DNA of 64,000 nucleotides from Ranitomeya imitator (taxonomy: Eukaryota). A program made the position numbers and the translations under genes. The stretch spans positions 34,472,001-34,536,000 of the forward strand of contig NC_091289.1 of NCBI RefSeq assembly GCF_032444005.1, in the 5' to 3' direction. This document shows, in pieces, positions 4,051-55,388 of this stretch. Position 1 is the first letter of the stretch. Each line of letters opens with the position of its first letter. A model generated the notes under the pieces. That model saw only the letters and a list, made by a program, of their open reading frames with translations. It was not told where the DNA came from and made no database searches.

Positions 4051-4167
4051 GAGACGGCGGCAGACCCAGCAGCTGGAGGAACAGGAGCGCGCCGGAGCAG
4101 GTAAGTATGAGCTGGAGCGGCGGTTGACCCGGCAGCAGATACGGTGAGAGGAGAGGCGGCCGTGACA
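4051..4167 (-). repeat. Gypsy 3' LTR remnant (first ~117 bp only), preceded by polypurine tract
   Basis: The PPT AGAAAAGGGGGAGTAAGAGGAGGAG lies immediately before TGTCACGG. About 90% identical by eye to the 5' LTR start. Confidence 0.85.
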
Positions 4168-4169
4168 GT

Positions 4170-7100
4170 ACTCCTCCTCTTACTCCCCCTTTTCTAAGAC
4201 CAGACAGAAACCTGGATAAAATCTGAGGAGCTTGTATGTTCTCACGGGGCTCCCAAGACCTCTCCTCAGGACCAAAACCCTTCCAATCAACGAAAAAGAG
4301 AGTTTTACCTCTTGAATTTTTCATGGCAAGAATGTCTTTAACCTCAAAAACATCTGGATCAGAGACAGGTAAAAGAGTTTGAGCAGGAGAAACATGGAAC
4401 TGATTGAAGACAACTGGTTTCAAAAGAGGAACATGAAAAGAGTTAGGTATGCGAAGAGAAGCTGTCAATTTCAGCTTGTAGGCAACATCATTGATACGAG
4501 ACACAACCTTGAAAGGGCCTATGTACCGTGGACCCAATTTATACGAGAGAATCTTTAGACGAATAAAACTGGAGAAGAATCCAGACGTCGTTTATCGCCA
4601 TATCTCTTTATCCTGGCCTGAGCCTGTTCCAGGGCGATTTTGGTCTCCTGCCAGACCCTGGAGAACTCCTCGGACAGAAGATCAGCCGCTGGTACACCCG
4701 AGACAGGGAGTACCGGCAGAGGGATACCAGGATGTTGCCCACAGACGATGAAGAATGAAGACTTGGAAGAAGACTCATTGATGTGGTTATTGTAAGCCAA
4801 CTCAGCCCACGGAAGTAAATCAGACCCAGTTATCTTGATGAGCGTTGGAAAAATGATGAAGATAAGTCATCAGTATTTGGTTTGTGCGCTCTGCTTGTCC
4901 GTTGGTCTGTGGATGAAAAGCTGTAGAAAAATCCAGGGTAACATTCATTAGGTTACATAGAGCCCGCCAGAAATGAGAAGTGAACTGAACTCTTCTATCA
5001 GAGACTATGTGCAATGGAAAGCCATGAATCCGGAAGACATGAGAAATGAAGATTCTCGCCAATTCAGGAGCGGAGGACAATCCTGGCAAAGGGATGAAGT
5101 GAGCCATTTTGGAGTATCGATCCACAACAACAAAAATGACTGTATGACCAGAAGACTTAGGCAGATCAGTAATAAAGTCCATAGCGATATGTTGCCACGG
5201 GGCTGAAGGAACTGGAAGTGAATGTAGGAGACCAGAGGGCAGATGTCTGGGAACCTTGTTCCTAGCGCAAGACGGACACGAAGAGACAAAACCTCGAACA
5301 TCCGAAAGAAGGGATGGCCACCAATAGTGGCGCGAGATGAGAGCGAGCGTTTTCTTGCACCCGACATGGCCTGCCAGTCATGAGGCATGGCCCCAACATA
5401 GGACTCGAGACCTCTCGTTCACCCAGACAAGGGTTTTACCTGATGGTAAGGAAGACAAGCTGACCGGAGCCACTAGAATAATTTTGCTGGGGTCCACGAT
5501 GTGTGCTGGTTCTTCTACAACATCAGATGCAAGAAATGACCTGGACAAAGCATCAGCTTTAAAGTTCTTGTTCAGGATGGAAATGTAGTTCAAAGTCAAA
5601 ACGGGCAAAGAATAATGACAATCTGGCTTGTCAGGGATTCAATCTTTGCACAGAGTGGATATATTCCAGGTTCTTGTGGTCTGTAAAGATCTTGAAAGGG
5701 TGAACAGCTCCCTCTAACAGATAATTCCATTCCTCCAGCGCCAATTTTATGGCCAATAGTTCCTTGTCACCAATGGCGTAGTTCCTCTCCGAGGCGGAGA
5801 AGATTTTGGAAAAGAAACCACAAGTAGCCAGTCGTCCGGAAGAAGATCTCTGGGAGCGTACTGCACTAGCTCCAATGGCAGAAGCATCTACCTCAAGAAT
5901 AAAGTGTTTGTTGATCTCAGGCCGATGGAGTACAGGAGCCGAGGCAAATGCTTGCTTCAGAGACCGAAAAGCATCTTCAGCTTCGGAAGACCAGATGTGA
6001 GGATTGGACCCCTTGCGAGTCAAAGCAGAAATTAAGGCGACCAGAGAGGAGAAATGTGGAATAAACTGCCGGTAGTAATTGGCGAACCCAAGGAAATGTT
6101 GAATTGCTTTCACTCCCTGAAGAAGTGGCCAGTTAAGCACAGCAGACACTTTCTCCGGGTCCATTTGCAAGCTAGAGTCAGAAATGATATAGCCAAGAAA
6201 CAGTAGCGAAGACTGCTCAAAAACACATTTCTCCAGTTTGGCGTAAAGATGATTCTCTCTAAGACGGGAGAGCACTTGACAGACATCTCTTCTGTGAGAA
6301 GCAAGATCAGAGGAGAACACCAGAATGTCATCTAAGTACACCACCACACAGGAGTAGAGTAGATCTCAGAAAACATCATTCACAAACTCCTGGAACACTG
6401 CTGGAGCATTACACAAGCTGAAAGGCATGACTAAATACTCATAGTGACCATCCCAGGTGTTAAAAGCAGTTTTCCTTTCGTCTCCTGAACGAATACGGAT
6501 TAAGTTGTAAGCTCCGTGAAGATCCAATTTCGTGAAAATTCGGCTCCCCTCAGGCGATCAAACAACTCAGGTATGAGTGGTAACGGGTACTTGTTCTTGT
6601 TTGTAAGATTGTTGAGGCCACGGTAGTCTATACAAGGACGAAGAGTCCTATCCTTCTTAACTAAGAAAAATCCCGCACCTGCAGGGGAGGAGGATTTGCG
6701 AATAAAACCTTTGGTTAAATTCTCCTGGACGTATTCAGTCATGGCTTGAGTCTCGGTTGGAGACAACGGGTAGATTCGACCTCAGGGAGGAGTAGAGCCC
6801 GGAACTAGATCAATTGGGCAGTCGTAGGGTCGATGCGAAGGTAAAGTCTCAGCCTCTTTCTTATCAAAGACATCCAGGAAAGACAAATACGAGGAAGGTA
6901 AATTGGAAGTCCCCGAGATAGGACGAGAAGATTCTCTTGGCAACACAGGAAGCAAACAGTTACTCTGGCAGAAGAGTCGCCAACGCAGGATTTCACCAGA
7001 CCGCCAGTCAATGCAATGCTTGTGACTCCTCAACCAAGGAAGTCCAAGAAGAAATGTGTGGGATAAAGAAGGCAGCACATAGAAGACGATCTTCTCACGG

Positions 7101-7390
7101 TGCAGGATTCCAATTTGGAGTTCCAATTCTTTGGTAACCAACGTAACGGACTCCCACAAAGGTTGGCCATCGACTGACGCAATCTGTCGAGGAGTCTCCA
7201 GGGATCTGACTGGAATTCGCAATCTCCTAACTGCCTCGAGTTGAATAAAGTTCCAGGCTGTCCCGGAATCTATATAAGCAGAGTCAGAGAAACGTTTATT
7301 ACCCAGATGTAAAAGAACAGAAAGAGTGAGGGGAGTGAGGGGTTGAGAGGGTTCTGGGATACCTAGGGAGAACTCTCTTACCTGTCCTAG
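4170..7390 (-). pseudogene. Gypsy pol (protease, RT, RNase H, integrase, chromodomain), fragmented
   Basis: Motifs [34 protein letters not shown]...KELLAI, MDFITDLP, HPQTNGQAER and FVDWKGFGPEERSWEP, spread over several frames. Confidence 0.95.
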
Positions 7391-7880
7391 GTGGAGGCGT
7401 TTCCCGGCCTCAAAGGACAGGAACGCAAGAGATGAGACACACTGCCACAATAGAAACAGAGACCTTGAGCAAGCCTCTCTTTCCGACGCTGCTCCACAGG
7501 TTTAAGATGGTCCACCTGCATGGGTTCCGGGGCAGAAGTCGACTCAGACCGAGAACGGGAATAATTAGAAGTAACCGGAGGGAGTCGAGGAAATCTCTCT
7601 CTAGCGGATTCTCGAGAACGTTCCTGGAAACATAAATCAATGCGGGTTGCCAAAGCAATAAGATGTTCCAAGGACGTCAGAGTATCACGACCTGCCAACT
7701 CATCCTTGATTCGAGGAGAAAGCCCACGCCAGAAGGCTCCCACCAAAGCCTCGTTATTCCATCCTAATTTGGATGAAATGGTGCGAAACCGGATGGCGTA
7801 TTGGCCCACCGAAAGCGTACCTTGATGAAAGTTAAACAGAGACTCGGTGGTAGAGGCCAAACGACCCGGTTCATCAAATA
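7387..7880 (-). pseudogene. Gypsy gag, C-terminal part with CCHC zinc knuckle
   Basis: FDEPGR...QGTLSVGQYAIRFR...GLSPRIKDEL...PEPMQV...CFYCGSVSHLLRSC. It rejoins the N-terminal part in frame as FRKV|FDEPGR. Confidence 0.92.
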
Positions 7881-9769
7881 CAGGGTGGAGCGCGGTAATT
7901 TGCTTTTTTGCACTGCATGCTGTGGCGGCACTGTCGGTCGAAGAGAGGGGAGAGTGGGTGTGGCTTACAGTGGCTGATGGGAGATTTGTATTCCTCTGCC
8001 TTTCAGTTGCCATCATGCAGTGGACACGTGAGGAAAGGTCATTTTGTGTTGAAGCGTATTTTTCAAATGCCCACTCGATCATTGCAGTGCAGCGTGCTTT
8101 TCGTTTACAATTCGCTGTTCCTCCACGCGGACGTGTTCCTGGACGGCAATCAATTGTAAATTGGGTGAATGCATTCAGAACAGCAGGGAATGTGTCATGT
8201 GTACGAAGGGGACCTGAGAGAAGGATTACAACACCACAAAACATCGAGAGAGAGAGTTAGAGCAGCAGTACTGCAATCTCCGAAACGCTCTTGGCATTTC
8301 AAGACGTTCTCTCCACCGGATTCTTCATGATGAACTGAATTTTCACGCGTATAAAATGTGCGTGGTCCAACATTTGTCAGCATGGGACTATTTGACACGA
8401 CCGTCCCAACACCTTGGAAGACCTAAGGAACAATATTGAAGCTGAAATTGGCAGAATACCAGTGGACATGCTTGTTAGAGTTCATGAAAACTTCAGAAAA
8501 CGTATGCAGCAGTGTGTGGATAGCGAAGGTCGACATTTGCCAGATACACTATTTAAAACCATGTAATTTAAAAATTCCATTACTGTTCAGTAGAGTTGAG
8601 CGACCTTGACCTTTTTAGAGTCGAGCCGGGTTTTGCGAAACCCGACTATGTCCAAAGTCGGGTCGAGTGAAATCGGCCGATTATGACGTAAAGTCGGGAT
8701 CGACCGAAACACGAAACCCAATGCAAGTCAATGGGGCAGCATAGTCGGCAGTGAGTGGGGGCCAGGAAAACACCTAGAGTGCCCATTTTAATGTCAAAAC
8801 CATCCATTCTTCTTAATGAAGCTTGTCAAGCGTAATTTACCTTAAAATAATTGGAAGGCATTTGAAATTGGGGGTCATTTGGCTAAAGTTGTGGGGGGTA
8901 GGGCTGGTTCAAGTAATTAGTGGGCCCAGTAAATCTGGACCACGTCACGGCAGTGGAGCAGGGAGAGGTAAGTATTTCAACTTTGCAAGTGCTGTGATCC
9001 TGAGCAAGCAGGGGGGGCCCACTCGTTGGCATTGGCACTGGCACAGGGCCCCTCAAAGTACAGCGGTGTGTTTGCACGGCGGGGGCGCCTCCCACCGGCA
9101 GCAACACTTTTGCGTACTATGAGAGGCCCTGTGCCAGTGACGTCGCCAACTAGTATTCCTCCCCCCACCTGATGAAGGAACCTGCACTTTCATCTGCACC
9201 TTCCTCTTTGTCCCCGTGTAAGGTGGTATGGTATGCGGGACGAGCAACCTGACTTTCAGCAGGGTCACAATGTTGTTGTGTAGCGTGCACGGGGAATGTT
9301 GCGTTATGGGTCAATGTACCAGCAGACTCATCTATCACTGGCTGGGCAATGGGCACGATGAAGTGGAAACACAGATATAGGCCCAAAGAAGAAAGTGGGC
9401 TAAATGCAGTTCAAAATTGGTAACACAGGAATAACCAGGGGGCATTGCAGTGGAGGACAACTGGAATGAGAGGCTGACACAGAGAGTAGGGCCAAATCAG
9501 TAAGTAGTCGAAATGCAGTTCAAAATTGGCAACCGTAGTAAACAGGCGGCACAGCTTTGTTCAGTGGAGGAGAACAGCAAGGAGTGGCAGACACCGATAG
9601 TAGGCCCCAACCCAACTAGTAGGCCAAATGCAGTCTAACATTAACAACTACTTAACGAGAGGCTGAAAATGGAATTTCAGGACAGGAAACCAGGAGAACA
9701 GCAAGGAGTGGCAGACACCGATAGTAGGCCCCAAACCAACTAGTACGCCAAATGCAGTTGTTCCATTTA

Positions 9770-10750
9770 ACCACAATTTAATGAGAGCCTGAAGATAGAA
9801 GCTCAGGAAAGGCAACCTGGGGAACACCTTGGAGTGTAACACACCATCTCTCTCCACCCCATACCCATTTTGTAGGCCTAATGCTGTGTACTTTTCTACA
9901 ACTACTAAACGAGAGTCGGAAGACCGAAGCAATGGCAAGGAAACCTGGGGAACACCTTGGAGTGTAACACACCATCTCTCTCCACCCCATACCCAATTTG
10001 TAGGCCTAATGCAGCCTACTTTCCGACACCTGCTAAACGAGAGCATGAAGATCGAAGCTCAGGAAAGGCAACCTGGGGAACACCTTGGAGTGTAACACAC
10101 CATCTCTCTCCACCCCATACCCATTTTTTAGGCCTAATGCAGTGTACTTTTCTACAACTACTAAACGAGAGTCGGAAGACCGAAGCAATGGCAAGGAAAC
10201 CTGGGGAACACCTTGGAGTGTAACACACCATCTCTCTCCACCCCATTCCCCATTTTTTAGGCCTAATGCAGCCTACTTTCCGACACCTACTAAACGAGAG
10301 CATGAAGATCGAAGCTCAGGAAAGGCAACCTGGGGAACACCTTGGAGTGTAACACACCATCTCTCTCCACCCCATACCCATTTTGTAGGCCTAATGCTGT
10401 GTACTTTTCTACAACTACTAAACGAGAGTCGGAAGACCGAAGCAATGGCAAGGAAACCTGGGGAACACCTTGGAGTGTAACACACCATCTCTCTCCACCC
10501 CATACCCAATTTGTAGGCCTAATGCAGCCTACTTTCCGACACCTACTAAACGAGAGCATGAAGATCGAAGCTCAGGAAAGGCAACCTGGTGAAAACCTTG
10601 GAGTGTAACACAACCTGTCTCTACACCCCATACACAATTAGTAGGCCTAATGCAGCGTAGTTTCCAACAGCTACTAAACGAGAGCCGGAAGATCGAAGCT
10701 CAGGAAAGGCAACCTGGGGAACACCTTGGAGTGTAACACAACCTCTCTCT
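9770..10750. repeat. 128-bp tandem array inside hAT with alternating A/B monomers
   Basis: TTGGAGTGTAACAC recurs at 128-129-bp spacing (e.g. 9831, 9959, 10087, 10215, 10344, 10472, 10600, 10728). Confidence 0.92.
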
Positions 10751-11169
10751 ACACCACGGAAGGGCTGATTCTTAGGAAGGAAGGCTGTTGTAAATTGCGC
10801 GTCCGAGGGTGATTATATTCTTATTCGGTATCTACTCACCCTCGGACGCGCCATGCTTCTTGATTTGTAATTAATGTTTATTTGCAATGTGCTTTTGACT
10901 TACTCAATTATTTTTTTAATTATTGATTTTATTAAATTAATAGTTTAACATCTTATTGGAAATAATTTAAAGGAGACGCGACAGGACAACACTCGGTGGA
11001 TGCCATATCTGTGTTAACAACTCCAAAAAACTTTCAGTTAACTTCTTGCAGGAGAAAGAAATTGTAGCTGTTGGACCTTTGTAGTACAGTTCCAGATATT
11101 TGTTGTGTGTTTGTTTTGATTGTTAAAATGTCTGCATTTGAGATCTCAACACGATCTTATTTTTTATAA

Positions 11170-13135
11170 TCAAATTAATTTTTTAAATATTTTATTAGGT
11201 TGGTTCAAGGGGTACACGGGCCGCAGTAGACAGGTCAGTGGAGGCCTAGTGGAAGGAGGGACCACAGACAGGCATCGAAGGCCTAAAATAATAACACATG
11301 GCTGTAGGCAATTTTAAATTGGTTCCAGGGGTACACGGGCAGCAGTGCCCTGGTCAGTGTAGTAGTAGTTGAAAGAATGGACCGCAGACAGGCATCGAAG
11401 GCCTAAAATAAAAAAATTGGGCTGGCTGTAGGCAATTTTAAATTGGTTCCAGGGGTACACGGGCAGCAGTGGTGTGGTCAGTGGAGGCCTAGTGGAAGGA
11501 GTGACCGCAGACAGGCATCGAAGGCCTAAAATATTAACACATGGCTGTAGTCAATTTTAAATTGGTTCCAGGGGTACTTGGGCAGCAGTGCCCTGGTCAG
11601 TGTAGTAGTAGTTGAAAGAATGGACCGCAGACAGGCATCGAAGGCCTAAAATAAAAAAATTGGGCTGGCTGTAGGCAATTTTAAATTGGTTCCAGGGGTA
11701 CACGGGCAGCAGTGGTCTGGTCAGTGGAAGTCTAGTGGAAGGAGTGACCGCAGACAGGCTTCGAAGGCCTAACATAACAAACTTGGGCTGGCTGTAGGCA
11801 CTTTTAAATTGGTTCCAGGGGTACATGGGCAGCAGTGTATGGTCAGTGGAAGTCTAGTGGAAGGAGTGACCGCAGACAGGCTTCCAAGGCCTAACATAAC
11901 AAACTTGGGCTGGCTGTAGGCACTTTTAAATTGGTTCCAGGGGTACACGGGCAGCAGTGGTCTGGTCAGTGGAAGTCTAGTGGAAGGAGTGACCGCAGAC
12001 AGGCTTCCAAGGCCTAACATAACAAACTTGGGCTGGCTGTAGGCACTTTTAAATTGGTTCCAGGGGTACACGGGCAGCAGTGGTCTGGTCAGTGGAAGTC
12101 TAGTGGAAGGAGTGACCGCAGACAGGCTTCGAAGGCCTAACATAACAAACTTGGGCTGGCTGTAGGCACTTTTAAATTGGTTCCAGGGGTACATGGGCAG
12201 CAGTGTATGGTCAGTGGAAGTCTAGTGGAAGGAGTGACCGCAGACAGGCTTCCAAGGCCTAACATAACAAACTTGGGCTGGCTGTAGGCACTTTTAAATT
12301 GGTTCCAGGGGTACACGGGCAGCAGTGGTCTGGTCAGTGGAAGTCTAGTGGAAGGAGTGACCGCAGACAGGCTTCGAAGGCCTAACATAACAAACTTGGG
12401 CTGGCTGTAGGCACTTTTAAATTGGTTCCAGGGGTACACGGGCAGCAGTGGTCTGGTCAGTGGAAGTCTAGTGGAAGGAGTGACCGCAGACAGGCTTCGA
12501 AGGCCTAACATAACAAACTTGGGCTGGCTGTAGGCACTTTTAAATTGGTTCCAGGGGTACATGGGCAGCAGTGGTCTGGTCAGTGGAAGTCTAGTGGAAG
12601 GAGTGACCGCAGACAGGCTTCCAAGGCCTAACATAACAAACTTGGGCTGGCTGTAGGCACTTTTAAATTGGTTCCAGGGGTACACGGGCAGCAGTGGTCT
12701 GGTCAGTGGAAGTCTAGTGGAAGGAGTGACCGCAGACAGGCTTCGAAGGCCTAACATAACAAACTTGGGCTGGCTGTAGGCACTTTTAAATTGGTTCCAG
12801 GGGTACATGGGCAGCAGTGGTCTGGTCAGTGGAAGTCTAGTGGAAGGAGTGACCGCAGACAGGCTTCCAAGGCCTAACATAACAAAATTGGGCTGGCTGT
12901 AGGCACTTTAAATTGGTTCCAGGGGTACATGGGCAGCAGTGTATGGTCAGTGGAAGTCTAGTGGAAGGAGTGACGGCAGACAGTCTTCGAAGGCCTAACA
13001 TAACAAAATTGGGCTGACTGTAGGCACTTTTAAATTGGTTCCAGGGTAACACGGCCAGCAGTGGCCTGGTCAGTGTAGTAGTTGTAGAAAGAAGGGACCG
13101 CAGACAGGCTTCGAAGGCCTAACATAACAAAAATG
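11170..13135. repeat. 123-bp tandem array (~15-16 copies) inside hAT
   Basis: Unit TTTTAAATTGGTTCCAGGGGTACAC...GGCTGTAGGCAC. It produces the 41-aa periodic spurious ORFs. Confidence 0.93.
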
Positions 13136-13590: not shown

Positions 13591-16500
13591 CTAGGTGTCA
13601 GCCGGGCAGGGTGGGGCAAAAGATTTTGAAATCCAGTTGTGGTTCATTTTAATGAAGGTTAGATCATCTACATTTTGGGTAGCCAGACGAGTCCTTTTTT
13701 CTGTTAGTATTGAACCTGCAGCACTGAATACTCTTTCTGATAGGACACTAGCTGCCGGGCAAGCAAGCTCCTGCAATGCATATTCTGCCAATTCTGGCCA
13801 GGTGTCTAATTTGGATGCCCAGTAATCAAATGGGAATGACGGTTGAGGGAGAACGTCGATAAGGGATGAAAAATAGTTTGTAACCATACTGGACAAATGT
13901 TGTCTCCTGTCACTTTGAATTGATGCTGCAGTACCTGTCCTGTCTGCGGTCATAGAAAAATCACTCCACAACCTGGTCAGAAAACCCCTCTGGCCAACGC
14001 CACTTCTGATTTCTGCCCCTCTAACACCTCTGGTCTGCTGGCCCCTGGAGCTCGTGTGAGAACGATCACGGGCGCTGTGTGCAGGGAATGCCAGAAGCAA
14101 ACGGTCAACAAGAGTTGATTGTTTTGTTGCTAATATTAGTTCCAAGTTCTCATGTGGCATAATATTTTGCAATTTGCCTTTATAGCGAGGATCAAGGAGG
14201 CAGGCCAACCAGTAATCGTCATCGTTCATCATTTTTGTAATGCGTGTGTCCCTTTTGAGGATACGCAAGGCATAATCCGCCATGTGGGCCAAAGTTCCCG
14301 TTGTCAAATCTGCGGTTGTGCTTGGTTGAGGGGCAGTTGCAGGCAAATCTACGTCACTTGTGTCCCTCAAAAAACCAGAACCCGGCCTTGCCACGCCACC
14401 AATTTCCCGTGCCCCCGGGAAAGCTTCCTCATTAAAAATATACTCATCCCCATCATCCTCCTCATCCTCCACCTCCTCTTCGCCCGGTACCTCGTCATGT
14501 ACACTGCCCTGACCAGACAATCGCTGACTGTCATCAAGGCTTTCCTCTTCCTCTGGTGCAGACGCCTGATCCTTTATGTGCGTCAAACTTTGCATCAGCA
14601 GACGCATTAGGGGGATGCTCATGCTTATTATGGCGTTGTCTGCACTAACCAGCCGTGTGCATTCCTCAAAACACTGAAGGACTTGACACATGTCTTGAAT
14701 CTTCGACCACTGCACACCTGACAACTCCATGTCTGCCATCCTACTGCCTGCCCGTGTATGTGTATCCTCCCACAAAAACATAACAGCCCGCCTCTGTTCG
14801 CACAGTCTCTGAAGCATGTGCAGTGTTGAGTTCCACCTTGTTGCAACGTCTATGATTAGGCGATGCTGGGGAAGGTTCAAAGAACGCTGATAGGTCTGCA
14901 TACGGCTGGAGTGTACAGGCGAACGGCGGATATGTGCGCAAAGTCCACGCACTTTGAGGAGCAGGTCGGATAACCCCGGATAACTTTTCAGGAAGCACTG
15001 CACCACCAGGTTTAAGGTGTGAGCCAGGCAAGGAATGTGTTTCAGTTGGGAAAGGGAGATGGCAGCCATGAAATTCCTTCCGTTATCACTCACTACCTTG
15101 CCTGCCTCAAGATCTACAGTGCCCAGCCACGACTGCGTTTCTTGCTGCAAGAACTCGGACAGAACTTCCGCGGTGTGTCTATTGTCGCCCAAACACTTCA
15201 TAGCCAATACAGCCTGCTGACGTATGCCAGTAGCTGCCCCATAATGGGAGACCTGGTGTGCAACAGTGGCAGGTGCGGATGGAGTGTTTGTGCGACTGCG
15301 GTCTGTGGACGAGCTCTTGCTTCTGCAGGAGGACGAGGAGGAGGAGGAGGAGGAGGGGGTGCGAACGGCTACAGACAACTGTTTACTAGACCGTGGGCTA
15401 GGCAGAACTGTCCCAAACTTGCTGTCCCTTGTGGACCCTGAATCCACCACATTTACCCAGTGTGCCGTGATGGACACGTAACGTCCCTGGCCATGCCTAC
15501 TGGTCCATGCATCTGTTGTCAGGTGCACCTTTGTGCTCACAGATTGCCTGAGTGCATGGACGATGCGCTCTTTAACATGCTGGTGGAGGGCTGGGATGGC
15601 TTTTCTGGAAAAAAAGTGTCGACTGGGTAGCTCGTAGCGTGGTACAGCGTAGTCCATCAGGTCTTTGAAAGCTTCGCTTTCAACTAACCGGTAGGGCATC
15701 ATCTCTAACGAGATTAGTCTAGCTATGTGGGCGTTCAAACCCTGTGTACGCGGATGCGAGGCTAAGTACTTCCTTTTTCTAACCATAGTCTCATGTAGGG
15801 TGAGCTGGACTGGAGAGATGGAGATCGTGGAACTAGCGGGGGTGCCGGTGGACATGGCAGACTGAGAGACGGTGGGAGATGGTATTGTTGCCGCCGGTGC
15901 CCTAGATGCAGTGTTTCCTACTACGAAACTGGTGATTCCCTGACCCTGACTGCTTTGGCCTGGCAAAGATACCTGCACAGATACAGCAGGTGGTGCGCTA
16001 AATGGTGGTCCTACACTGCCGGAAGGGATGTTGCGTTGATGACTAGCTTCATTGGCCGAGGGTGCAACAACCTTAAGGGACATTTGGTAGTTAGTCCAAG
16101 CTTTCAAATGCATGGTGGTTAAATGTCTATGCATGCAACTAGTATTGAGACTTTTCAGATTCTGACCTCTGCTTAAGGAAGTAGAACATTTTTGACAGAT
16201 GACTTTGCGCTGATCAATTGGATGTTGTTTAAAAAAATGCCAGACTGCACTCTTTCTAGCATCGGATACCTTTTCAGGCATTGCAGACTGAGCTTTAACC
16301 GGATGGCCACGCTGTCCTCCACCAGGTTTTGGCTTTGCCACGCGTTTTGGGCAAGATACGGGCCCGGCAGATGGAACCTGTGGCGATGTTGATGCCTGCT
16401 GCGGCCCCTCCTCCTCCTCTGCTTCAGAACTGCTGCCGCCTGCACCCTGTTCCCCCAATGGCTGCCTATCGGGGTCAAGAACTGGGTCATCTAATAACTC

Positions 16501-17169
16501 TTCTTGTACCTCCTGCGCAACTTCGTCTGTGTCACCGTGTCGTTCGGTGGTATAGCGTTCGTGATGGGGCAACATAGTCTCATCAGGGTCTGATTCTTGA
16601 TCAGCACCCTGCGAGGGCAATGTTGTGGTCTGAGTCAAAGGACCAGCATAGTAGTCTGGCTGTGGCTGTGCGTCAGTGCACTCCATGTCAGATTCAATTT
16701 GTAATGGGCATGGACTGTTAACTGCTTCACTTTCTAAGCCAGGGACGGTATGTGTAAAGAGCTCCATGGAGTAACCCGTTGTGTCGCCTGCTGCATTCTT
16801 CTCTGTTGTTGTTTTTGCTGAAGAGGACAAGGAAGTGACTTGTCCCTGACCGTGAACATCCACTAACGACGCGCTGCTTTTACTTTTACCAGTTTCACGA
16901 GAGGAGGCAAAAGAGCTAGAGGCTGAGTCAGCAAGATAAGCCAAAACTTGCTCTTGCTGCTCCGGCTTTAAAAGCGGTTTTCCTAATCCCAGAAAAGGGA
17001 GCGTTCGAGGCCTTGTGTAGCCGGACGACGAACCTGGCTCCACAGCTCCAGACTTAGGTGCAATATTTTTTTCCCCACGACCACCTGATGCTCCACCACT
17101 ACCACTACCCTCATTACCAGCTGACAATGAACGCCCCCGGCCACGACCTCTTCCACTAGACTTCCTCAT
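13591..17169 (-). CDS. hAT transposase, 1192 aa, ZBED-like: BED finger, DDE core, CxxH, C-terminal dimerisation domain
   Basis: BED motif AVWHFF...CQKC...HRHLTTMH, plus TTDAWTS, SDNGRN, CLAH, TRWNST, SERVFS and YWASK...ELA. Uninterrupted ORF. Confidence 0.93.
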   Translation of the reverse strand: MRKSSGRGRGRGRSLSAGNEGSGSGGASGGRGEKNIAPKSGAVEPGSSSGYTRPRTLPFLGLGKPLLKPEQQEQVLAYLADSASSSFASSRETGKSKSSASLVDVHGQGQVTSLSSSAKTTTEKNAAGDTTGYSMELFTHTVPGLESEAVNSPCPLQIESDMECTDAQPQPDYYAGPLTQTTTLPSQGADQESDPDETMLPHHERYTTERHGDTDEVAQEVQEELLDDPVLDPDRQPLGEQGAGGSSSEAEEEEGPQQASTSPQVPSAGPVSCPKRVAKPKPGGGQRGHPVKAQSAMPEKVSDARKSAVWHFFKQHPIDQRKVICQKCSTSLSRGQNLKSLNTSCMHRHLTTMHLKAWTNYQMSLKVVAPSANEASHQRNIPSGSVGPPFSAPPAVSVQVSLPGQSSQGQGITSFVVGNTASRAPAATIPSPTVSQSAMSTGTPASSTISISPVQLTLHETMVRKRKYLASHPRTQGLNAHIARLISLEMMPYRLVESEAFKDLMDYAVPRYELPSRHFFSRKAIPALHQHVKERIVHALRQSVSTKVHLTTDAWTSRHGQGRYVSITAHWVNVVDSGSTRDSKFGTVLPSPRSSKQLSVAVRTPSSSSSSSSSCRSKSSSTDRSRTNTPSAPATVAHQVSHYGAATGIRQQAVLAMKCLGDNRHTAEVLSEFLQQETQSWLGTVDLEAGKVVSDNGRNFMAAISLSQLKHIPCLAHTLNLVVQCFLKSYPGLSDLLLKVRGLCAHIRRSPVHSSRMQTYQRSLNLPQHRLIIDVATRWNSTLHMLQRLCEQRRAVMFLWEDTHTRAGSRMADMELSGVQWSKIQDMCQVLQCFEECTRLVSADNAIISMSIPLMRLLMQSLTHIKDQASAPEEEESLDDSQRLSGQGSVHDEVPGEEEVEDEEDDGDEYIFNEEAFPGAREIGGVARPGSGFLRDTSDVDLPATAPQPSTTADLTTGTLAHMADYALRILKRDTRITKMMNDDDYWLACLLDPRYKGKLQNIMPHENLELILATKQSTLVDRLLLAFPAHSARDRSHTSSRGQQTRGVRGAEIRSGVGQRGFLTRLWSDFSMTADRTGTAASIQSDRRQHLSSMVTNYFSSLIDVLPQPSFPFDYWASKLDTWPELAEYALQELACPAASVLSERVFSAAGSILTEKRTRLATQNVDDLTFIKMNHNWISKSFAPPCPADT

Positions 17170-17329: not shown

Positions 17330-18990
17330 TTAGAGAGATGCCCCACACGCAGGACTGTCACTGAAGCACAAATGTTAATATTAATGTCACACTATTATTT
17401 TTTTTTTATTTTTATTTTTTTCAGGAACACTTTAGAAACCCCCCCCAAAAAAAAACATTGATTTTTGCAGGGAGAATTTAGAAAACAAATGTAACAAACT
17501 ATATGCTTTCTATGGGCCACTGAGTGAGAGATGACGCACACAGGAATCAGGAGTGGCACACAAGCCCAGAGGCCAATATTTTTCTACCAATGATTGATGG
17601 AGTTATTTTCTCTGGTAGATTTTGGAACCCAAATCAAGGAAAAAAAATATAGGCTTTCTATGGACCACAATTGGAGAGAGAGAGAGAGAGAGAGAGATGG
17701 CACACCCAGGAGTCAAGACTGGCACACAAGCAGAAAGGCCAATATTAATCTCCCACTGTTTTTTTTGGTTGATTTTTTTTTTTTTTTTTCAGGGAGACTT
17801 TAGAAAAAAAAATAATAAAAAAAATATGATTTTATCAGGAAGAATTTAGAAACCAAATAAAATAAAATGATTTTTTCAGGGAGAATTTATAAAACAAATA
17901 AAACCAAAAATAGGCGTTCTATGGCCCACTGACTAAGAGAGAGAGAGAGAGATGGAACGCTTAGTACTGGCACACAAGCCCAAAGGGCAATATTAATCTC
18001 CCTTTTTTTTTCCAGGGAGAATTTCTAAAACCCCCCCAAAAAAAAAAATAGGCTTTCTATGGCCCACTATTTGTGAGAGAGATGGGACGCTCAGGACTGG
18101 CACAGATGGCACGCTCAGGACTGGCACAGAAGCCCAGAGGCCAATATTAATCTCCCTTTTTTTCTGGGAGAATTTATAAAACCAAAAAAATATTTAAATA
18201 GGCTTTCTATGGCCCACTATTTGTGAGAGAGATGGCACGCTCAGGACTGGCACAGATGGCACGCTCACAACTGGCACACAAGCCCAGAGGCCAATATTAA
18301 TCTCCCTTTTTTCAGGGAAAATTTATAAAACCAAAAAAAAAATTAAATAGGCTTTCTATGGCCCACTATTTGTGAGAGAGATGGCACGCTCAGGACTGGC
18401 ACAGATGGCACGCTCACAACTGGCACACAAGCCCAGAGGCCAATATTAATCTCCCTTTTTTCAGGGAAAATTTATAAAACAAAAAAAAAAATTAAATAGG
18501 CTTTCTATGGCCCACTATTTGTGAGAGAGATGGCACGCTCAGGACTGGCACAGATGGCACGCTCACAACTGGCACACAAGCCCAGAGGCCAATATTAATC
18601 TCCCTTTTTTTCAGGGAGAATTTATAAAACCAAAAAAAAAATTAAATAGGCTTTCTATGGCCCACTATTTGTGAGAGAGATGGCACGCTCAGGGCTGGCA
18701 CAGATGGCACGCTCAGGACTGGCACACAAGCCCAGAGGCCAATATTAATCTCCCTTTTTTTCAGGGAGAATTTATAAAACCCAAAAAAAAATAAAATAGG
18801 CTTTCTATGGCCCACTATTTGTGAGAGAGATGGCACACTCAGGACTGGCACACAAGCCCAAAGGCCAATATTAATCTCCCACTGTATTTTTATCAGGGAG
18901 AATTTATACACCCCACAAAAAAAAATACAGAAAAATGAAAAGGCTTTCTATGGCCCACTATGTGAGAGAGATGGCACACACAGGGATGGC
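17330..18990. repeat. ~150-bp tandem array inside hAT, upstream of transposase
   Basis: TAGGCTTTCTATGGCCCACT recurs at 149-150-bp spacing (18049, 18199, 18348, 18497, 18647, 18797), with degenerate flanking copies. Confidence 0.9.
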
Positions 18991-23748: not shown

Positions 23749-24317
23749 CATATATATATATATATAAATTATTATTGCTGTAATCCTAATGACCTGTAAA
23801 ATAAAGTCAAAGGGGACCAGTCAGCAGGACAAAAGTGGCAACTTTTTTCTCTTATTTTATTCCTGCTGCTCCTTTTATTATTACTTTAAAAAAAAAAAAA
23901 ATCTACCCTACAGTTTCAAAAATATGGCCCTTTTGTATTGAGGAAAATAATGAAGCCTAAAGACACCCCCCCAGAAAATCTATAAGACACACCCCCTTGG
24001 TAAAGAACATAAAACTTGCAGTGAATAAAAATGGTCAAATCCCTGGAAGAGTATGGCGGTGTACTCAGAGGAACAGCAGGAATAAAATAAGAGCAGACAG
24101 TGGTCACTTTTGACCTCGTGACGGATCCTGATATTTTTCGCACACGATGAATTAGAATAGAAAGTTGACTTTAAAAAGAATGACGCAGTTGCTTTTCTTT
24201 TAATCCAATCCCACAAATATTTATTTTTCATTTTTCATACGGTAAAAATATTACAGTAAAACAAAAGCTGCTATCTTGATAAGAAAATGTAAAAGGTTAT
24301 AGCCTTTAGTAAGCTGG

Positions 24318-24800
24318 GGTATTAAGTATGCAAATTTCCTGTTCAGAGAGAAAGAGGACTAGCACCTCCTAAAAGTCAATATTGACGCTTTAACGAGCCT
24401 TGTCACATGACATTGGATAAAAGCCAAACCAGAAACTCAATTTGCAGACTCTTTGTTTTGGGTTGTTGCCTGTCGTCAGCACAAAGTATGAGATCTGATT
24501 TGGCTAGGTCAGAGGCTTAAGACTGGGATCTATGGTGTAAAGTTTCTCCTTGTGGAGAGTGACAAGCCAGGCCTGGCATGTCAGAGTGAGGAGACTTATA
24601 AGGCATGCATTCTCGTCTGAGAAATTAAGTATGTAAATTGCCTCTTCAGAGAGGAAGAGGACTAGAACTCTAGTGCCACCTATTGTAAGAAGCAATTCAT
24701 TTCCCAGAGGAGCATGCATGGTGCACAAGTCTCCTCACTCTGACATGCCAGGCTTGGCTTGTCACTGTCCACAAGGAGAAATGTTACCCCTTAGATCCCA
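24318..24800 (-). mobile_element. Hammerhead-carrying repeat (retrozyme-like), copy A: monomer plus restart plus inverted segment
   Basis: The unit restarts 303 bp later (24324 vs 24627). 24695-24800 is the reverse complement of 24523-24625. Degenerate HHR at 24441-24485. Confidence 0.75.
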
Positions 24801-26894: not shown

Positions 26895-27290
26895 TAATAT
26901 AATATGCAAATTGCCTCTTCAGGTAGGAAACTCTGGCGCCTCGTATTGGAAGCAGCAATTCTAAAAGTCAATATCGACCCTTTCACGAGCTTTGTCACAT
27001 GACTTAGGGCAAAAATCGATCCTGAATCTCAATTTGCAGACACGTGTTTTGAGATTATGCCCATCCTCGGTGAAAAACAAGAGATCTAATTTGGCTGTAT
27101 GACAGGCCTCTGACTGGGGTCACCCCTTAAACCCTAGTCAGAAGTTTCTCCTTCAGCCAAATCTAATCTCTAAAGAGACCATTTGCATATTTAATTTCCC
27201 AGAGGAGCATTGCATGGCCTATAAGTCTCCTTACACTGGAATGTCAGACATGTCTCTTCACGAAGGAGAGACATTACCCCTGAGATCCTA
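26895..27290 (-). mobile_element. Hammerhead-carrying repeat (retrozyme-like), copy B
   Basis: Homologous to copy A. Degenerate HHR at 27033-27076 with palindrome ACACGTGT. Inverted arm at 27181-27290. Confidence 0.75.
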
Positions 27291-27315: not shown

Positions 27316-27773
27316 CTAGATTGTGGCCCGATTCTAACGCATCGGGTATTCTAGAATATGCATGTCCCCATAGTATATGGACAATGATGATTCCAGAATT
27401 CGCGGCAGACTGTGCCCGTCGCTGATTGGTCGAGGCAACCTTTATGACATCATCGTCACCATGGCAACCATTATGACATCTACGTCGATACTGTGCCCGT
27501 CGCTGAATCAGAAACGTGGGATTTCTACGTCCTTTATAACATCATCGTCGCTGTGCCCGTTGCTGATTGGTCGAAGCCTGGCGGCCTCGACCAATCAGAG
27601 AAGCGGGATTTCTACGTCGATGCTGTGCCCGTCGCTGATTGGTCAAGGCCTGGCGGCCTCGACCAATCAGAGACGTGGGATTTCCAGGACAGACAGACAG
27701 ACAGAAAGACAGACAGACAGACAGACAGAAAGACAGACAGACGGAAAAACCCTTAGGCAATTATATATATAGA
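27316..27773 (-). mobile_element. Non-autonomous Helitron (~458 bp) with (GACA)n
   Basis: Minus strand A|TC...CCCGAT-N8-ATCGGG hairpin...CTAG|T, with an internal tandem segment and a GACA microsatellite. Confidence 0.85.
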
Positions 27774-44922: not shown

Positions 44923-46528
44923 CAGTGGGGCAAAAAAGTATTTAGTCAGTCAGCAATAGTGCAAGTTCCACCACTTAAAAAGATGAGAGGCGTCTGTAAT
45001 TTACATCATAGGTAGACCTCAACTATGGGAGACAAACTGAGAAAAAAAAATCCAGAAAATCACATTGTCTGTTTTTTTAACATTTTATTTGCATATTATG
45101 GTGGAAAATAAGTATTTGGTCAGAAACAAAATTTCATCTCAATACTTTGTAATATATCCTTTGTTGGCAATGACAGAGGTCAAACGTTTTCTGTAAGTCT
45201 TCACAAGGTTGCCACACGCTGTTGTTGGTATGTTGGCCCATTCCTCCATGCAGATCTCCTCTAGAGCAGTGATGTTTTTGGCTTTTCTCTTGGCAACACG
45301 GACTTTCAACTCCCTCCAAAGGTTTTCTATAGGGTTGAGATCTGGAGACTGGCTAGGCCACTCCAGGACCTTGAAATGCTTCTTACGAAGCCACTCCTTC
45401 GTTGCCCTGGCGGTGTGCTTTGGATCATTGTCATGTTGAAAGACCCAGCCACGTTTCATCTTCAATGCCCTTGCTGATGGAAGGAGGTTTGCACTCAAAA
45501 TCTCACGATACATGGCCCCATTCATTCTTTCATGTACCCGGATCAGTCGTCCTGGCCCCTTTGCAGAGAAACAGCCCCAAAGCATGATGTTTCCACCACC
45601 ATGCTTTACAGTAGGTATGGTGTTTGATGGATGCAACTCAGTATTCTTTTTCCTCCAAACACGACAAGTTGTGTTTCTACCAAACAGTTCCAGTTTGGTT
45701 TCATCAGACCATAGGACATTCTCCCAAAACTCCTCTGGATCATCCAAATGCTCTCTAGCAAACTTCAGACGGGCCCGGACATGTACTGGCTTAAGCAGTG
45801 GGACACGTCTGGCACTGCAGGAACTGAGTCCATGGTGGCGTAGTGTGTTACTTATCGTAGGCCTTGTTACATTGGTCCCAGCTCTCTGCAGTTCATTCAC
45901 TAGGTCCCCCCGCGTGGTTCTGGGATTTTTGCTCACCGTTCTTGTGATCATTCTGACCCCACGGGGTGGGATTTTGCGTGGAGCCCCAGATCGAGGGAGA
46001 TTATCAGTGGTCTTGTATGTCTTCCATTTTCTAATTATTCCTCCCACTGTTGATTTCTTCACTCCAAGCTGGTTGGCTATTGCAGATTCAGTCTTCCCAG
46101 CCTGGTGCAGGGCTACAATTTTGTTTCTGGTGTCCTTTGACAGCTCTTTGGTCTTCACCATAGTGGAGTTTGGAGTCAGACTGTTTGAGGGTGTGCACAG
46201 GTGTCTTTTTATACTGATAACAAGTTTAAACAGGTGCCATTACTACAGGTAATGAGTGAAGGAAAGAGGAGACTCTTAAAGAAGAAGTTACAGGTCTGTG
46301 AGAGCCAGAAATCTTGATTGTTTGTTTCTGACCAAATACTTATTTTCCACCATAATATGCAAAAAAAATGATAAAAAAACAGACAATGTGATTTTCTGGA
46401 TTTTTTTTTCTCAGTTTGTCTCCCATAGTTGAGGTCTACCTATGATGTAAATTACAGACGCCTCTCATCTTTTTAAGTGATGGAACTTGCACTATTGCTG
46501 ACTGACTAAATACTTTTTTGCCCCACTG
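44923..46528 (-). mobile_element. Full-length Tc1 transposon (1606 bp), IR/DR type
   Basis: TA|CAGTGGGG...CCCCACTG|TA, ~208-bp TIRs each with two AAGTATTT(A/G)GTCAG direct repeats. Confidence 0.97.
45139..46161 (-). CDS. Tc1 transposase, 340 aa, intact DD34E
   Basis: Paired-like [22 protein letters not shown] and SPDLNPIE; 34 residues counted between the second D and E. Confidence 0.96.
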
Positions 46529-53438: not shown

Positions 53439-54187
53439 CTGTACAACTTCAAAAAGTTTTCAGTAGTGTACAATCATTTTACAATTTTGGCACCATGTCA
53501 TTCTTTAGGACTCGTAATTTCAGTGCTTTAAGAATTGCTCAATTCACCAATTATATATTAAATTAAGAAATTTCTTAAATTCTTCTCGTTGAGACGGTCT
53601 TTTGATAGAGAGACTTCCATTGTACCAGACTCTAATAGGTTTTGCTAAGTGGGACTGGTGTTTTAAAGTGACTGCCTTGGCTATACATTAGTGGCCTAAT
53701 CTAATTCACAAGAGTCAATTATCGGCCTGTGTATAAACCATTTCCCAGGGAGTGATGATGGCTTTGTAAATGAAGACAGCCTGTGCTCTTGCACAGATAA
53801 AAAGACAAAGGTCTGGCTGTCGGAGGTATGTCTCCTTTTGAGTACACAGGACTAAAACATCAATTATTGCCCCTACATACCGCTGTCAGAAATGTTTCAA
53901 GAAAATGTTTTAATGTTCTACGAGTGCACAGAATATCTTCATATATCTCATGTCCATCACATAAAATGGACAGGAGTTGTCTCCTGGAAGTTAACAATGA
54001 AAATTGTTATTGAATGACAGCGAGCAGAGACCTTGAAGATTATGAAAATTGATAGAAAAAAGTATATTGGAAAATTGTAGAACTTTTCTGTTATGAGGAA
54101 TAAGTGAGGTGAGACTGTGTAGTGGAGTCCAAGGATTACGAGTCTTCACCCTTTAAGGCCAATACAAGGAATTTGCCTTCAGGGAAG

Positions 54188-54590
54188 AGATATCGTTTCT
54201 CCTTGCGGAGAGTGACATGTTAAGCATGTCGAGATGAGCAGAATTAAAGCTGCAAAGCTCCTCTGGGAAATATGCAAATTGTCTCTTCAGAGAGGAAGAG
54301 AACTAGAACTCTAGTGCCACCTATTGGAAGTAGTAATCCTAATAGTCAATGTCGACCCGTTAACGAGCCTTGTCACATGACTTAGGATAATAGCCAAACC
54401 AGAATCTCAATTTGCAGACACTGTGTTTTGGGGTACTTCCCCTCATCAGTGCAAAGTGGAGATCTGGTTTGGCTGAGAGAGTCATGTGACAAGGCTCATT
54501 AAAGGGTTGACATTGACTGTTAGGATTGCTACTTCCAATAGGTGGCACTAGAGTTCTAGTCCTCTTCCTCTCTGAAGAGACAATTTGACT
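54188..54590 (-). mobile_element. Hammerhead-carrying repeat (retrozyme-like), copy C, palindromic
   Basis: Homologous to A and B, circularly permuted. Inverted arms span 54275-54587. Confidence 0.78.
54411..54455 (-). ncRNA. Type I hammerhead ribozyme motif (G12A variant)
   Basis: UUUGCA-CUGAUGA-GGGG AAGUA CCCC-AAAA-CACAGUGU-C-UGCAAA: 6-bp stem I, canonical CUGAUGA, 4-bp stem II, GUC cleavage triplet. Confidence 0.8.
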
Positions 54591-55388
54591 TCAGGGAAGG
54601 AAATCCACAGGTTATACATTCCCCAAAGCTAAATGGCAGATCCTGGTTTGAGGCTGAACAGGACCATTCTCAGTGGTGAGACAGGAGTCAGATCTTGATC
54701 AGGTGGAAGCCAAAGGTCCCAAACCAGTTGTGGTGCAACAAGTCCTAAGATGGCTGGCAGAGGAGTAGTCAAGAACAGCCCAGAGGAGAGCAGAAGAAAA
54801 ATATAAGTAGGAGGAAAATCCAATTAGAAGAGTCTGGAAACAACCGTAACCTCTCAAATATATTTTTCATTAAATCCAAAACTGACCTAATCTGAGAATG
54901 CAAATAGTTCATTGCCCTTTGTGATCCAACGCCCTTAGCCAGCTGGTGAGACCACCTAATGAGATGGTCTGCCAAAGCACTGATTAGCTAGCTAGCTAGG
55001 CACTTAGACCATCAACAGAAGCATGTTTGCAGTACATTTGCCATCAAAAATCACCACCAGCCCCCTAGAGAATCCTATAATGGCGACAGGAACTGAGGTC
55101 CGCTAGCGCAGGAACATGGCGAGATGAACAGCTTTCTTGTACAAAACCAGGATACTTTTCTATACAAAATGCCTGCAATGCCAACAACAAGCAGTGGGGT
55201 GTCTTGCTGCTGGGACCCACAATTCAGATTTAACATTTTAGTACTGTAAAGCCTCTGTGCACTGCAGTACTTGCCTCATTACGCTTTGCTTTTAGAGAGA
55301 TATTCCAGTTTAGAAGCAATACTTCTAGAGAATTCCTTCGTACATATAGAGTCCAACTGAACTTCTGTCTAATGTGTAGCGGGGGGCC

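What the first reader, a model, noticed from the sequence alone, without database searches (positions are those of the whole stretch)
54411..54455. Hammerhead ribozyme at the core of a dispersed ~300-330-bp frog repeat: candidate satellite-2-like non-LTR retrozyme
Seen: the minus strand reads UUUGCA-CUGAUGA-GGGG(AAGUA)CCCC-AAAA-CACAGUGU-C/UGCAAA. This is a type I hammerhead with a GUC cleavage triplet, and stem I continues through an internal loop into AUCUC/GAGAU and CCAAACCAG/CUGGUUUGG. Homologous, more decayed motifs sit at 24441-24485 and 27033-27076 in the same repeat; the latter has the exact palindrome ACACGUGU as stem III, which would allow dimeric folding. In copy A the unit restarts after 303 bp despite a ~25-bp deletion, giving a monomer of ~330 nt. 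The unit has no ORF. Established: newt satellite 2 is a ~330-bp hammerhead repeat, and metazoan non-LTR retrozymes are small non-coding hammerhead units that make circular RNA. Inference: this is an anuran retrozyme family. Caveat: all three copies have A at G12 (a CpG site), so these loci are probably inactive.
Basis: partly seen in the sequence, partly recalled or inferred. Interest (0 to 1): 0.88.

Follow-up and report, generated by a model that had tools for sequence, protein, structure and literature searches.

The report
Dead hammerhead retrozyme copy in frog
This is a real but mutation-killed copy of a very abundant 316-330-base non-coding frog repeat that carries a self-cutting hammerhead RNA; this kind of mobile element is already described in amphibians, so it is ordinary.

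Summary
The motif is there as described. On the minus strand, 54455-54411 reads a type I hammerhead with every core position intact except A for G at position 12. A relaxed hammerhead descriptor finds only this site in the window and none in 200 shuffles. Rfam gives no hammerhead hit above threshold.

Contigs of two frog species laid on the locus show a hugely abundant family. About 82% of the depth reads G12 (CCCC-GAAA). The only polymorphic core position is the free N7. Tandem joints give a 316-nt period.

So A12 in this copy is a derived CpG decay and the copy is dead. Copies A (24317-24799) and B (26900-27284) are more decayed still.

Each of the three insertions is non-coding and 43-45% GC. 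Each has flanking target-site duplications (18, about 15 and 9 bp) and consists of an inverted piece plus a direct or partial-tandem piece. That is the insertion style of Penelope-like retroelements, which are thought to mobilise animal non-LTR retrozymes.

This scan had already noted the same ~316-nt family elsewhere in this genome. Expression as RNA was not shown.

The parts
54411..54455 (-). Hammerhead motif of copy C: stem I 5' strand 54455-54450, CUGAUGA 54449-54443, stem II GGGG/CCCC 54442-54439 and 54433-54430, loop 2 54438-54434, A12-A13-A14-A15.1 54429-54426, stem III and loop 54425-54418, C17 at 54417 (predicted cleavage after it), stem I 3' strand 54416-54411.
   Evidence: family majority G at 54429
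54188..54581 (-). Whole insertion C, 394 bp, 44% GC. Read on the minus strand it is an inverted piece (54581->54480, reverse complement of unit 148->35) followed by a direct piece (54481->54193, unit 252->316->1->224) that holds the hammerhead.
   Evidence: the depth jumps from about 10-15 to 1e5-1e6 at these borders
54170..54187 (.). Target-site duplication of insertion C, left copy: AATTTGCCTTCAGGGAAG.
   Evidence: 17 of 18 identical to the right copy
54582..54599 (.). Target-site duplication of insertion C, right copy: AATTTGACTTCAGGGAAG.
54275..54382 (.). Right arm of the 313-bp palindrome of copy C. It pairs with 54480-54587 (108 nt, 94% complementary).
54480..54587 (.). Left arm of the palindrome, an inverted duplicate of unit 35-142.
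24317..24799 (-). Insertion A, 483 bp: an inverted piece (reverse complement of unit ~250->146) plus 1.25 direct tandem units (unit 80->316->1->~158, with a deletion of about 25 nt). Its possible 9-bp TSD, CAGTTTACT / CAGCTTACT at 24808-24800 and 24316-24308, is not significant on its own.
24441..24485 (-). Decayed hammerhead of copy A: CUGACGA is kept, stem II is broken (CAGG/ACCC), position 12 is A, stem III is damaged.
26900..27284 (-). Insertion B, 385 bp: an inverted piece (reverse complement of unit ~240->124), a complex junction, then a direct piece (unit ~209->316->1->152). TSD TGTTAAAAT-AGGAT / TATTAAAATGAGGAT at 27298-27285 and 26899-26885.
27033..27076 (-). Decayed hammerhead of copy B: core U4->C (CCGAGGA), stem II weakened, position 12 is A, 1-nt deletion in stem III.

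Best explanation
Copy C, and likewise copies A and B, is an old, inactivated insertion of a very abundant 316-330-nt non-coding hammerhead repeat of frogs, a non-LTR retrozyme. The expected life cycle of an intact source copy is inferred from the published model, not shown here. Tandem units would be transcribed. The type I hammerhead in each unit would cut after GUC; its helix III is weak (3 bp plus a triloop, or an 8-bp near-palindrome between two motifs), so it probably acts as a dimer as in salamanders. Unit-length RNAs that are highly self-paired would be released and circularised by a host ligase. Such RNA would then be copied back into DNA at staggered nicks by the reverse transcriptase and endonuclease of an autonomous element, most likely a Penelope-like element. 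What is shown at this locus is the product: a 394-bp insertion between 18-bp target-site duplications, made of an inverted piece joined to a direct piece. Because of that arrangement the hammerhead sits at the apex of a 313-bp palindrome. The copy then decayed. The catalytic G12 became A by CpG deamination, so this locus almost certainly cannot self-cleave.
For: The motif and its homologues are read directly, and the motif is beyond chance (1 hit against 0 in 200 shuffles). At family level, 21,961 and 25,178 contigs from two species lie on 54188-54587, and the summed depth there is 1e5-1e6 against 10-15 on the flanks. At 54429 the family reads G12 in 82%, 81%, 81% and 59% of depth in the four runs. 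At 54445 it reads C7 in 66% (the one free core position). At 54438 loop 2 is CAGUA in 99%. Tandem joints 54475->54196 with 36 letters between, and 54475->54191 with 31, both give a 316-nt period. G12 and N7 of copy C are CpG decays. There is no ORF above 62 aa and GC is 43-45%. The circular fold of a working unit is -101.9 kcal/mol, z = -5.3. TSDs are 18 bp (17/18), about 15 bp and 9 bp. All three insertions are an inverted piece plus a direct or partial-tandem piece. That matches the published Penelope-like insertion pattern of partial tandems, an adjacent inverted 5'-truncated copy and TSDs of variable length (PMC8557442). It also fits the published link between vertebrate retrozymes and Penelope-like elements (bioRxiv 10.64898/2026.07.22.740005). 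A contig of a second species crosses the right flank-element junction with 11 differences in 240 (record 32), so the insertion predates that species split. The axolotl Ax353 retrozyme hammerhead has the same layout.
Against: No Rfam hammerhead model reaches its gathering score. The best match is RAGATH-1-hammerhead at 13.8 bits against 56.3, E = 2.5. No self-cleavage, circular RNA or transcription was shown: the runs X15 and X16 are only guessed to be RNA, and their share of family contigs resembles that of the DNA runs. Family shares come from contigs aligned at 80% or more to this copy and are weighted by depth. No covariation test was possible with three decayed copies. No Penelope-like reverse transcriptase was seen among the ORFs of the window that were scanned, and homology of the unit to a Penelope-like terminal repeat (pLTR) was not tested. 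The outer end of the inverted piece (unit ~240) is not the same as the end of the direct piece (unit ~142-163), which is not exactly the textbook Penelope picture. The 9-bp TSD of copy A is within chance: 12% of random window pairs give 9 nt or more.
Confidence: 0.85

Rival explanations
1. The repeat is a MITE or fold-back DNA transposon, and the hammerhead-like string is a chance motif in the loop of its inverted repeat.
For: Copy C is a 313-bp near-perfect palindrome. Rfam gives no hammerhead hit.
Against: The palindrome is specific to this copy. Copies A and B have their inversion junctions elsewhere, and family contigs show head-to-tail 316-nt units. TSD lengths differ (18, ~15, 9 bp), unlike cut-and-paste elements. 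The family majority restores a complete hammerhead core, and the polymorphism falls on the free N7. The relaxed descriptor gives no hits in shuffles.
Confidence: 0.03
2. It is the same retrozyme family, but mobilised by a LINE (L1- or L2-type) enzyme, and the inverted pieces come from ordinary twin priming rather than from Penelope-like machinery.
For: TSDs of 9-18 bp and 5' inversions are also typical of L1-type target-primed reverse transcription (established knowledge). The element ends share microhomology with the target: AATTTG in copy C, AGGAT in copy B. The loose-end consensus beyond unit ~243 is T-rich on the plus strand, which could be an A-rich tail on the hammerhead-sense strand (table 7; agreement only 0.56-0.57).
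Against: None of the three window copies has a poly(A) tail. Partial tandems plus an adjacent inverted copy are the stated hallmark of Penelope-like elements. Vertebrate retrozymes co-occur with Penelope-like elements and are related to their terminal repeats. All three inverted pieces end at the same unit position, whereas twin priming by microhomology should scatter.
Confidence: 0.1
3. The locus itself is functional today, either as a still-active ribozyme or as a long hairpin that yields small RNAs.
For: The 313-bp hairpin with 94% complementary arms is very stable. The insertion is kept in a second species.
Against: G12 is the general base of hammerhead catalysis (established knowledge), and it is A here. 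Arm and core differences fit neutral decay with CpG loss: 6 CpG observed against 18.8 expected. Retention of an old neutral insertion in a sister species is expected. No RNA evidence exists for this locus: the flanks have zero depth in X15 and X16.
Confidence: 0.02

Closest known systems
Metazoan non-LTR retrozymes (Cervera & de la Pena 2020, PMC7229834), especially axolotl Rtz353 with HHR_Amex2
   Same: Both are small non-coding units (316-330 nt against 331 and 353 nt) with one type I hammerhead per unit. Both occur in tandem, have GC below 50%, have TSDs longer than 4 bp, and are predicted to fold into a highly self-paired RNA. The hammerhead layout is nearly the same as in the Ax353 clone: a 4-bp helix II, a 5-nt loop 2 (CAGUA here, CACUA there), and helix III CAC(A)GUGU here against CACGUGU there. 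A weak helix III implies action as a dimer.
   Different: Helix II here starts with a canonical G10.1-C11.1 pair rather than the U-U mismatch of HHR_Amex2. The cleavage triplet is GUC rather than GUA. Homology of the rest of the unit was not tested. Linear and circular RNAs are not shown for this frog. The window copies are dead.
Newt satellite 2 (Epstein and Gall; PMC2114352)
   Same: A dispersed or tandem repeat of about 330 bp carrying a type I hammerhead with a weak helix III. The unit also keeps an ATTTGCAT octamer (54272-54279). From my own memory (Coats, Zhang & Epstein 1994, not checked here), satellite 2 is driven by an snRNA-type promoter with an octamer.
   Different: The host is an anuran, not a urodele. 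No sequence comparison with satellite 2 was made. Promoter function was not tested.
Penelope-like elements and their hammerhead-bearing terminal repeats (PMC4209133, PMC8557442); Xenopus retrozyme families derived from them (bioRxiv 10.64898/2026.07.22.740005)
   Same: The insertion architecture matches: partial tandem, an adjacent inverted truncated copy, and TSDs of variable length. Both carry a type I hammerhead with a short helix III.
   Different: There is no reverse transcriptase or GIY-YIG endonuclease ORF in or next to these copies, so they are non-autonomous. The inverted and direct pieces end at different unit positions. Similarity to a Penelope-like terminal repeat of this genome was not tested.

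Membership tests
Hammerhead ribozyme, type I | Core C3-U4-G5-A6-N7-G8-A9 | tested here: met
   CUGAUGA in copy C and CUGACGA in copy A. Copy B has CCGAGGA, so U4 is lost. The family varies only at N7.
Hammerhead ribozyme, type I | G12-A13-A14 (G12 is the general base) | tested here: not met
   All three window copies read AAA with A at position 12. The family majority reads G12, at 82% of depth in X1. The family meets the feature; this locus does not.
Hammerhead ribozyme, type I | Three helices around the core with helix I open; G10.1-C11.1; A15.1-U16.1; H17 not G | tested here: met
   The descriptor hit has a 6-bp helix I, a 4-bp helix II and helix III, with the triplet GUC. Helix I extends to about 25 bp.
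Hammerhead ribozyme, type I | Score at or above the gathering threshold of an Rfam hammerhead model | tested here: not met
   No hit at gathering on the whole window or at E<=10 on 701 nt. On 71 nt the only hit is RAGATH-1-hammerhead at 13.8 bits against 56.3.
Hammerhead ribozyme, type I | Self-cleavage | not testable with these tools
   Needs in vitro transcription.
Metazoan non-LTR retrozyme | Small (about 170-400 nt) non-coding unit without LTR, PBS or PPT, and GC below 50% | tested here: met
   Unit of 316 nt to about 329 nt. Longest mechanical ORF is 62 aa. GC is 0.43-0.45.
Metazoan non-LTR retrozyme | Head-to-tail tandem units, each with a type I hammerhead | tested here: met
   Tandem joints in contigs of two species. 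Copy A holds 1.25 units with a 303-bp spacing. In this window no copy holds two hammerheads.
Metazoan non-LTR retrozyme | TSDs longer than the 4 bp of plant LTR retrozymes | tested here: met
   18 bp (17/18), about 15 bp, and 9 bp (the last is weak)..
Metazoan non-LTR retrozyme | Highly self-paired unit RNA | tested here: met
   Prediction only: circular MFE -101.9 kcal/mol, z = -5.3.
Metazoan non-LTR retrozyme | Expressed as unit-length linear and circular RNA | tested here: inconclusive
   Family contigs occur in many small runs that are only guessed to be RNA. None is on record as RNA, and contigs cannot show RNA ends or circles.
Penelope-like-mobilised element | Partial tandem plus adjacent inverted truncated copy, with TSDs of variable length | tested here: met
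   All three insertions, compared with the description in PMC8557442.
Penelope-like-mobilised element | Sequence similarity of the unit to the terminal repeat of an autonomous Penelope-like element of the same genome | not tested
   No Penelope-like element sequence of this genome was available. None was seen among the window ORFs scanned.
MITE / cut-and-paste DNA transposon | Terminal inverted repeats at constant ends and a TSD of fixed short length | tested here: not met
   TSDs are 18, ~15 and 9 bp. Inversion junctions differ between copies. The family occurs in tandem.

The most novel reading that the evidence does not exclude
The three independent insertions share both outer ends while their inner inversion junctions all differ. 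On one DNA strand the hammerhead-sense sequence ends at unit ~240 (AGATCC). On the other strand it ends at unit ~142-163, in or just past the ATTTGCAT octamer. Many family contigs also break off into heterogeneous flank at these two spots (table 7). This would mean that reverse transcription of the retrozyme RNA starts at two preferred internal sites, one from each nicked target strand, as expected if the template is a circle or multimer without a usable 3' end. That would be direct insertion-site evidence for how Penelope-type machinery copies retrozyme circular RNA.
Probability: 0.2. Interest if true: 0.5.

Novelty: new member of a known kind. Interest (0 to 1): 0.18.

Why it matters
It matters little as a discovery. 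Hammerhead retrozymes of about 316 nt are already reported for all amphibians sampled, and are experimentally characterised in the axolotl. The scan has met this family repeatedly in this genome. The locus is useful as a worked example. It shows that an apparently defective hammerhead (A12) is a CpG-decayed copy of a family whose majority keeps the full catalytic core. It also shows that three separate insertions carry the tandem-plus-inverted, variable-TSD signature that ties these non-coding elements to Penelope-like retrotransposition. The shared outer ends are a cheap lead for a genome-wide census of where cDNA synthesis starts.

Tried and rejected
1. Rfam cmscan at gathering threshold on the whole window, and at E<=10 on 701 nt and on 71 nt, gave no Hammerhead_1, HH9 or HH10 match. 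The only hit was a sub-threshold RAGATH-1-hammerhead alignment of the core. The other weak hits (PVT1_5, mir-304, snoRNAs) are chance.

2. Pattern scans for intact family copies in metagenome contigs and viral contigs found no frog copy. The degenerate pattern found three hits (two share one sequence), none like the frog family and apparently not from a frog, so they were dropped.

3. The search of earlier findings by sequence gave nothing.

4. A second sequencing-run run with kind rna listed no run on record as RNA, so expression stays open.

5. I first tried to read copy B as two cDNAs meeting exactly at unit 240/241. That failed on closer reading: its direct piece starts near unit 209 behind a small extra fragment.

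6. A covariation analysis was not attempted because three decayed copies carry no power.

7. A whole-unit comparison with the axolotl clones was not done because their sequences exist only as printed text. Only the hammerhead motifs were compared by eye.

8. The density of variable positions inside the motif (4 of 45) does not differ from the rest of the unit (about 22 of 215), so no claim of purifying selection is made.

Full report
**Observation.** On the minus strand, 54455->54411 reads TTTGCA CTGATGA GGGG AAGTA CCCC AAAA CACAGTGT C|TGCAAA.
- In hammerhead numbering this is helix I (6 bp), the core C3-A9, a 4-bp helix II that opens with G10.1-C11.1 and is capped by a 5-nt loop, then A12-A13-A14.
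- Helix III follows: A15.1-U16.1 and two further pairs around a CAG triloop. The triplet GUC puts C17 at 54417.
- Helices II and III are closed and helix I is open, so it is type I.
- Helix I continues through an internal loop into a 25-nt imperfect helix, 54392-54416 against 54450-54474. The 87-nt region folds at -37.6 kcal/mol, z = -6.2.
- A descriptor of my own requires the three helices and the core but accepts G or A at position 12. It finds this one site on both strands of the 64-kb window and none in 200 shuffled windows.
- The motifs at 24441-24485 and 27033-27076 are homologous. The three regions align at 86% mean column identity. Both are more damaged: copy A has lost helix II, and copy B has lost U4 and one letter of helix III. 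All three have A at position 12.

**Rfam.** No family reaches its gathering score in the window. There is no hammerhead hit at E<=10 on 701 nt. On 71 nt the only related hit is RAGATH-1-hammerhead at 13.8 bits against a threshold of 56.3, E = 2.5, and it aligns exactly the core and helices I and III. The locus therefore fails the curated models, as expected for a G12A copy with a minimal helix III.

**The family.** Only three copies lie in the window, so I laid public contigs on 54100-54800 at 80% likeness.
- The runs were two DNA runs of two species labels (X1, X3) and two small runs guessed to be RNA (X15, X16).
- 21,961 and 25,178 contigs lie on 54188-54587. Their summed depth is 1e5-1e6, against 10-15 on the single-copy flanks. 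The tool warns that this is not a copy number, but the family is clearly very abundant.
- At 54429 (plus T, which is minus A12) the other letter C, meaning G12, holds 82%, 81%, 81% and 59% of the depth in the four runs.
- At 54445 the family reads C7 in 66% of depth. N7 is the only free position of the core.
- At 54438 loop 2 reads CAGUA in 99% of depth.
- The only other variant listed inside the motif is a minor one in the helix III loop (54422).
- The family majority is therefore a complete hammerhead core. The sequence CCCC-G puts G12 in a CpG. Five of the eleven positions where copy C departs from the family majority are CpG decays, including G12 and N7. The copy keeps 6 CpG against 18.8 expected.
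G12 is the general base of hammerhead catalysis (established knowledge).

**Unit length and nature.**
- Contig joints 54475->54196 with 36 intervening letters, and 54475->54191 with 31, both give a head-to-tail period of 316 nt.
- Copies A and B carry about 13 more letters in the 54196-54268 region. Copy A restarts after 303 bp despite a deletion of about 25 nt. The family therefore spans roughly 316-330 nt.
- The longest mechanical ORF across the insertion is 62 aa, and GC is 43-45%.
- I stitched a working unit from pieces of copy C plus the 36 bridging letters. It is not a consensus. It folds as a circle at -101.9 kcal/mol, z = -5.3, with the long helix I, a 29-81 hairpin and a long-range 89-99/225-235 helix.

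**The insertions.**
- Copy C is bounded by an 18-bp direct repeat, AATTTG[C/A]CTTCAGGGAAG, at 54170-54187 and 54582-54599, 17 of 18 identical. Only 2 of about 300 random window pairs gave a repeat longer than 11 nt.
- Copy B has a repeat of about 15 bp with one indel.
- Copy A has a 9-bp repeat (8/9). That is within chance on its own: 12% of random pairs reach 9 nt or more.
- Mapped on the unit, every insertion is an inverted piece joined to a direct piece. Copy A is the reverse complement of unit ~250->146, then unit 80->316->1->~158, which is 1.25 tandem units. Copy B is the reverse complement of ~240->124, then about 209->316->1->152. Copy C is the reverse complement of 148->35, then 252->316->1->224.
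- In copy C the junction falls next to the natural helix I. The duplicated arms (108 nt, 94% complementary) therefore extend it into a 313-bp palindrome with the hammerhead at the apex. This is a property of this copy, not of the family.
- The inner junctions differ between copies, but the outer ends recur. One end is always near unit ~240 (GGGATCT, AGGATCT and AGATATC at the border). The other is at unit ~142-163, in or just past a conserved ATTTGCAT.

**Comparison with what is known.**
- Cervera & de la Pena (PMC7229834) define metazoan non-LTR retrozymes. These are tandem, non-coding units of about 170-400 nt with type I hammerheads, low GC and TSDs above 4 bp. They are expressed as self-paired linear and circular RNAs. 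Amphibian motifs need to act as dimers because helix III is weak.
- Their axolotl Ax353 clone reads CTGATGA TGCC CACTA GGCT GAAA CACGTGTA. It has the same helix II length, the same loop 2 size with almost the same sequence, and the same helix III letters as the frog family.
- Li, Clavereau & Pollet (bioRxiv 10.64898/2026.07.22.740005) found such retrozymes in all seven amphibians sampled, with a mean consensus of 316 bp. They include 57 Xenopus families related to the terminal repeats of Penelope-like elements.
- Craig et al. (PMC8557442) describe the Penelope-like insertion pattern: frequent 5' truncation, partial tandems, an adjacent inverted 5'-truncated copy, and TSDs of variable length. 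That is what all three copies show.
- No paper combining hammerhead or retrozyme with dendrobatid names appeared among the ten listed of 743 matches, so none was found. This particular family may therefore be undescribed by name, but the kind is known.
- Earlier notes of this scan report the same thing elsewhere in this genome: a ~316-nt monomer with a 5' inversion and a 14-bp TSD in Penelope style, and a decayed ~319-bp unit as an inverted pair. They call the host a poison frog, which I did not verify.

**Age and expression.**
- A contig of the second species crosses the right junction of copy C (54561-54800) with 11 differences in 240, so the insertion predates that species split (record 32).
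- Family words occur in runs of at least seven organism labels.
- Whether the family is transcribed remains open. X15 and X16 hold family contigs and no flank, but they are only guessed to be RNA. Their yield of family contigs per million letters is similar to that of the DNA runs.

**Verdict.** The locus is an old, dead copy of an abundant frog hammerhead retrozyme laid down in Penelope style. The kind is known, so interest is low. The one lead worth a census is the pair of recurrent outer ends.

Noticed in passing
window 54272-54279 (minus strand), also 24331-24338 and 26906-26913 regions: A perfect ATTTGCAT octamer sits at unit ~143-150, in the deepest bin of the family, with no listed variant. 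All three copies keep it, and many family copies end at or just after it. Newt satellite 2 is said to use an snRNA-type promoter with an octamer (from memory, unchecked).
   Followed up: partly
window 54191, 54271, 54586 (table 7): Hundreds of family contigs break off into heterogeneous flank at unit ~141-146 and just beyond unit ~243. The flank beyond ~243 is T-rich on the plus strand. This could reflect preferred element ends, AT-rich targets or A-tails.
   Followed up: partly
window 45139-46161 (-): A 340-aa ORF with Sleeping Beauty/Tc1-type HTH domains and a DDE_3 domain. It looks like a Tc1/mariner transposase.
   Followed up: partly
window 4022-8244 (-): A row of ORFs with gag, aspartyl protease, RT/RNase H, and integrase SH3 plus chromodomain hits. 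This is a Ty3/gypsy-type chromovirus-like LTR retrotransposon, broken into pieces.
   Followed up: partly
window 9783-13131 and 17950-18852: Long internal tandem arrays (periods 128, 123 and 150 bp) flank the 1192-aa ORF at 13591-17169.
   Followed up: no
window 27398-27690: Just upstream of insertion B lies a 72-bp tandem or palindromic array rich in CCAAT-box-like GATTGGTC/GACCAATC motifs. It is unrelated to the retrozyme.
   Followed up: no
L001 10986-11012, L002 4302-4328, L003 1827-1853: Metagenomic and viral contigs that match the degenerate core pattern. By eye they look like complete hammerheads (CTGAYGA GGGG-loop-CCCC GAAA plus a long helix III); they were not folded or scored. L001 and L003 show the same sequence around the match. 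None resembles the frog family.
   Followed up: no
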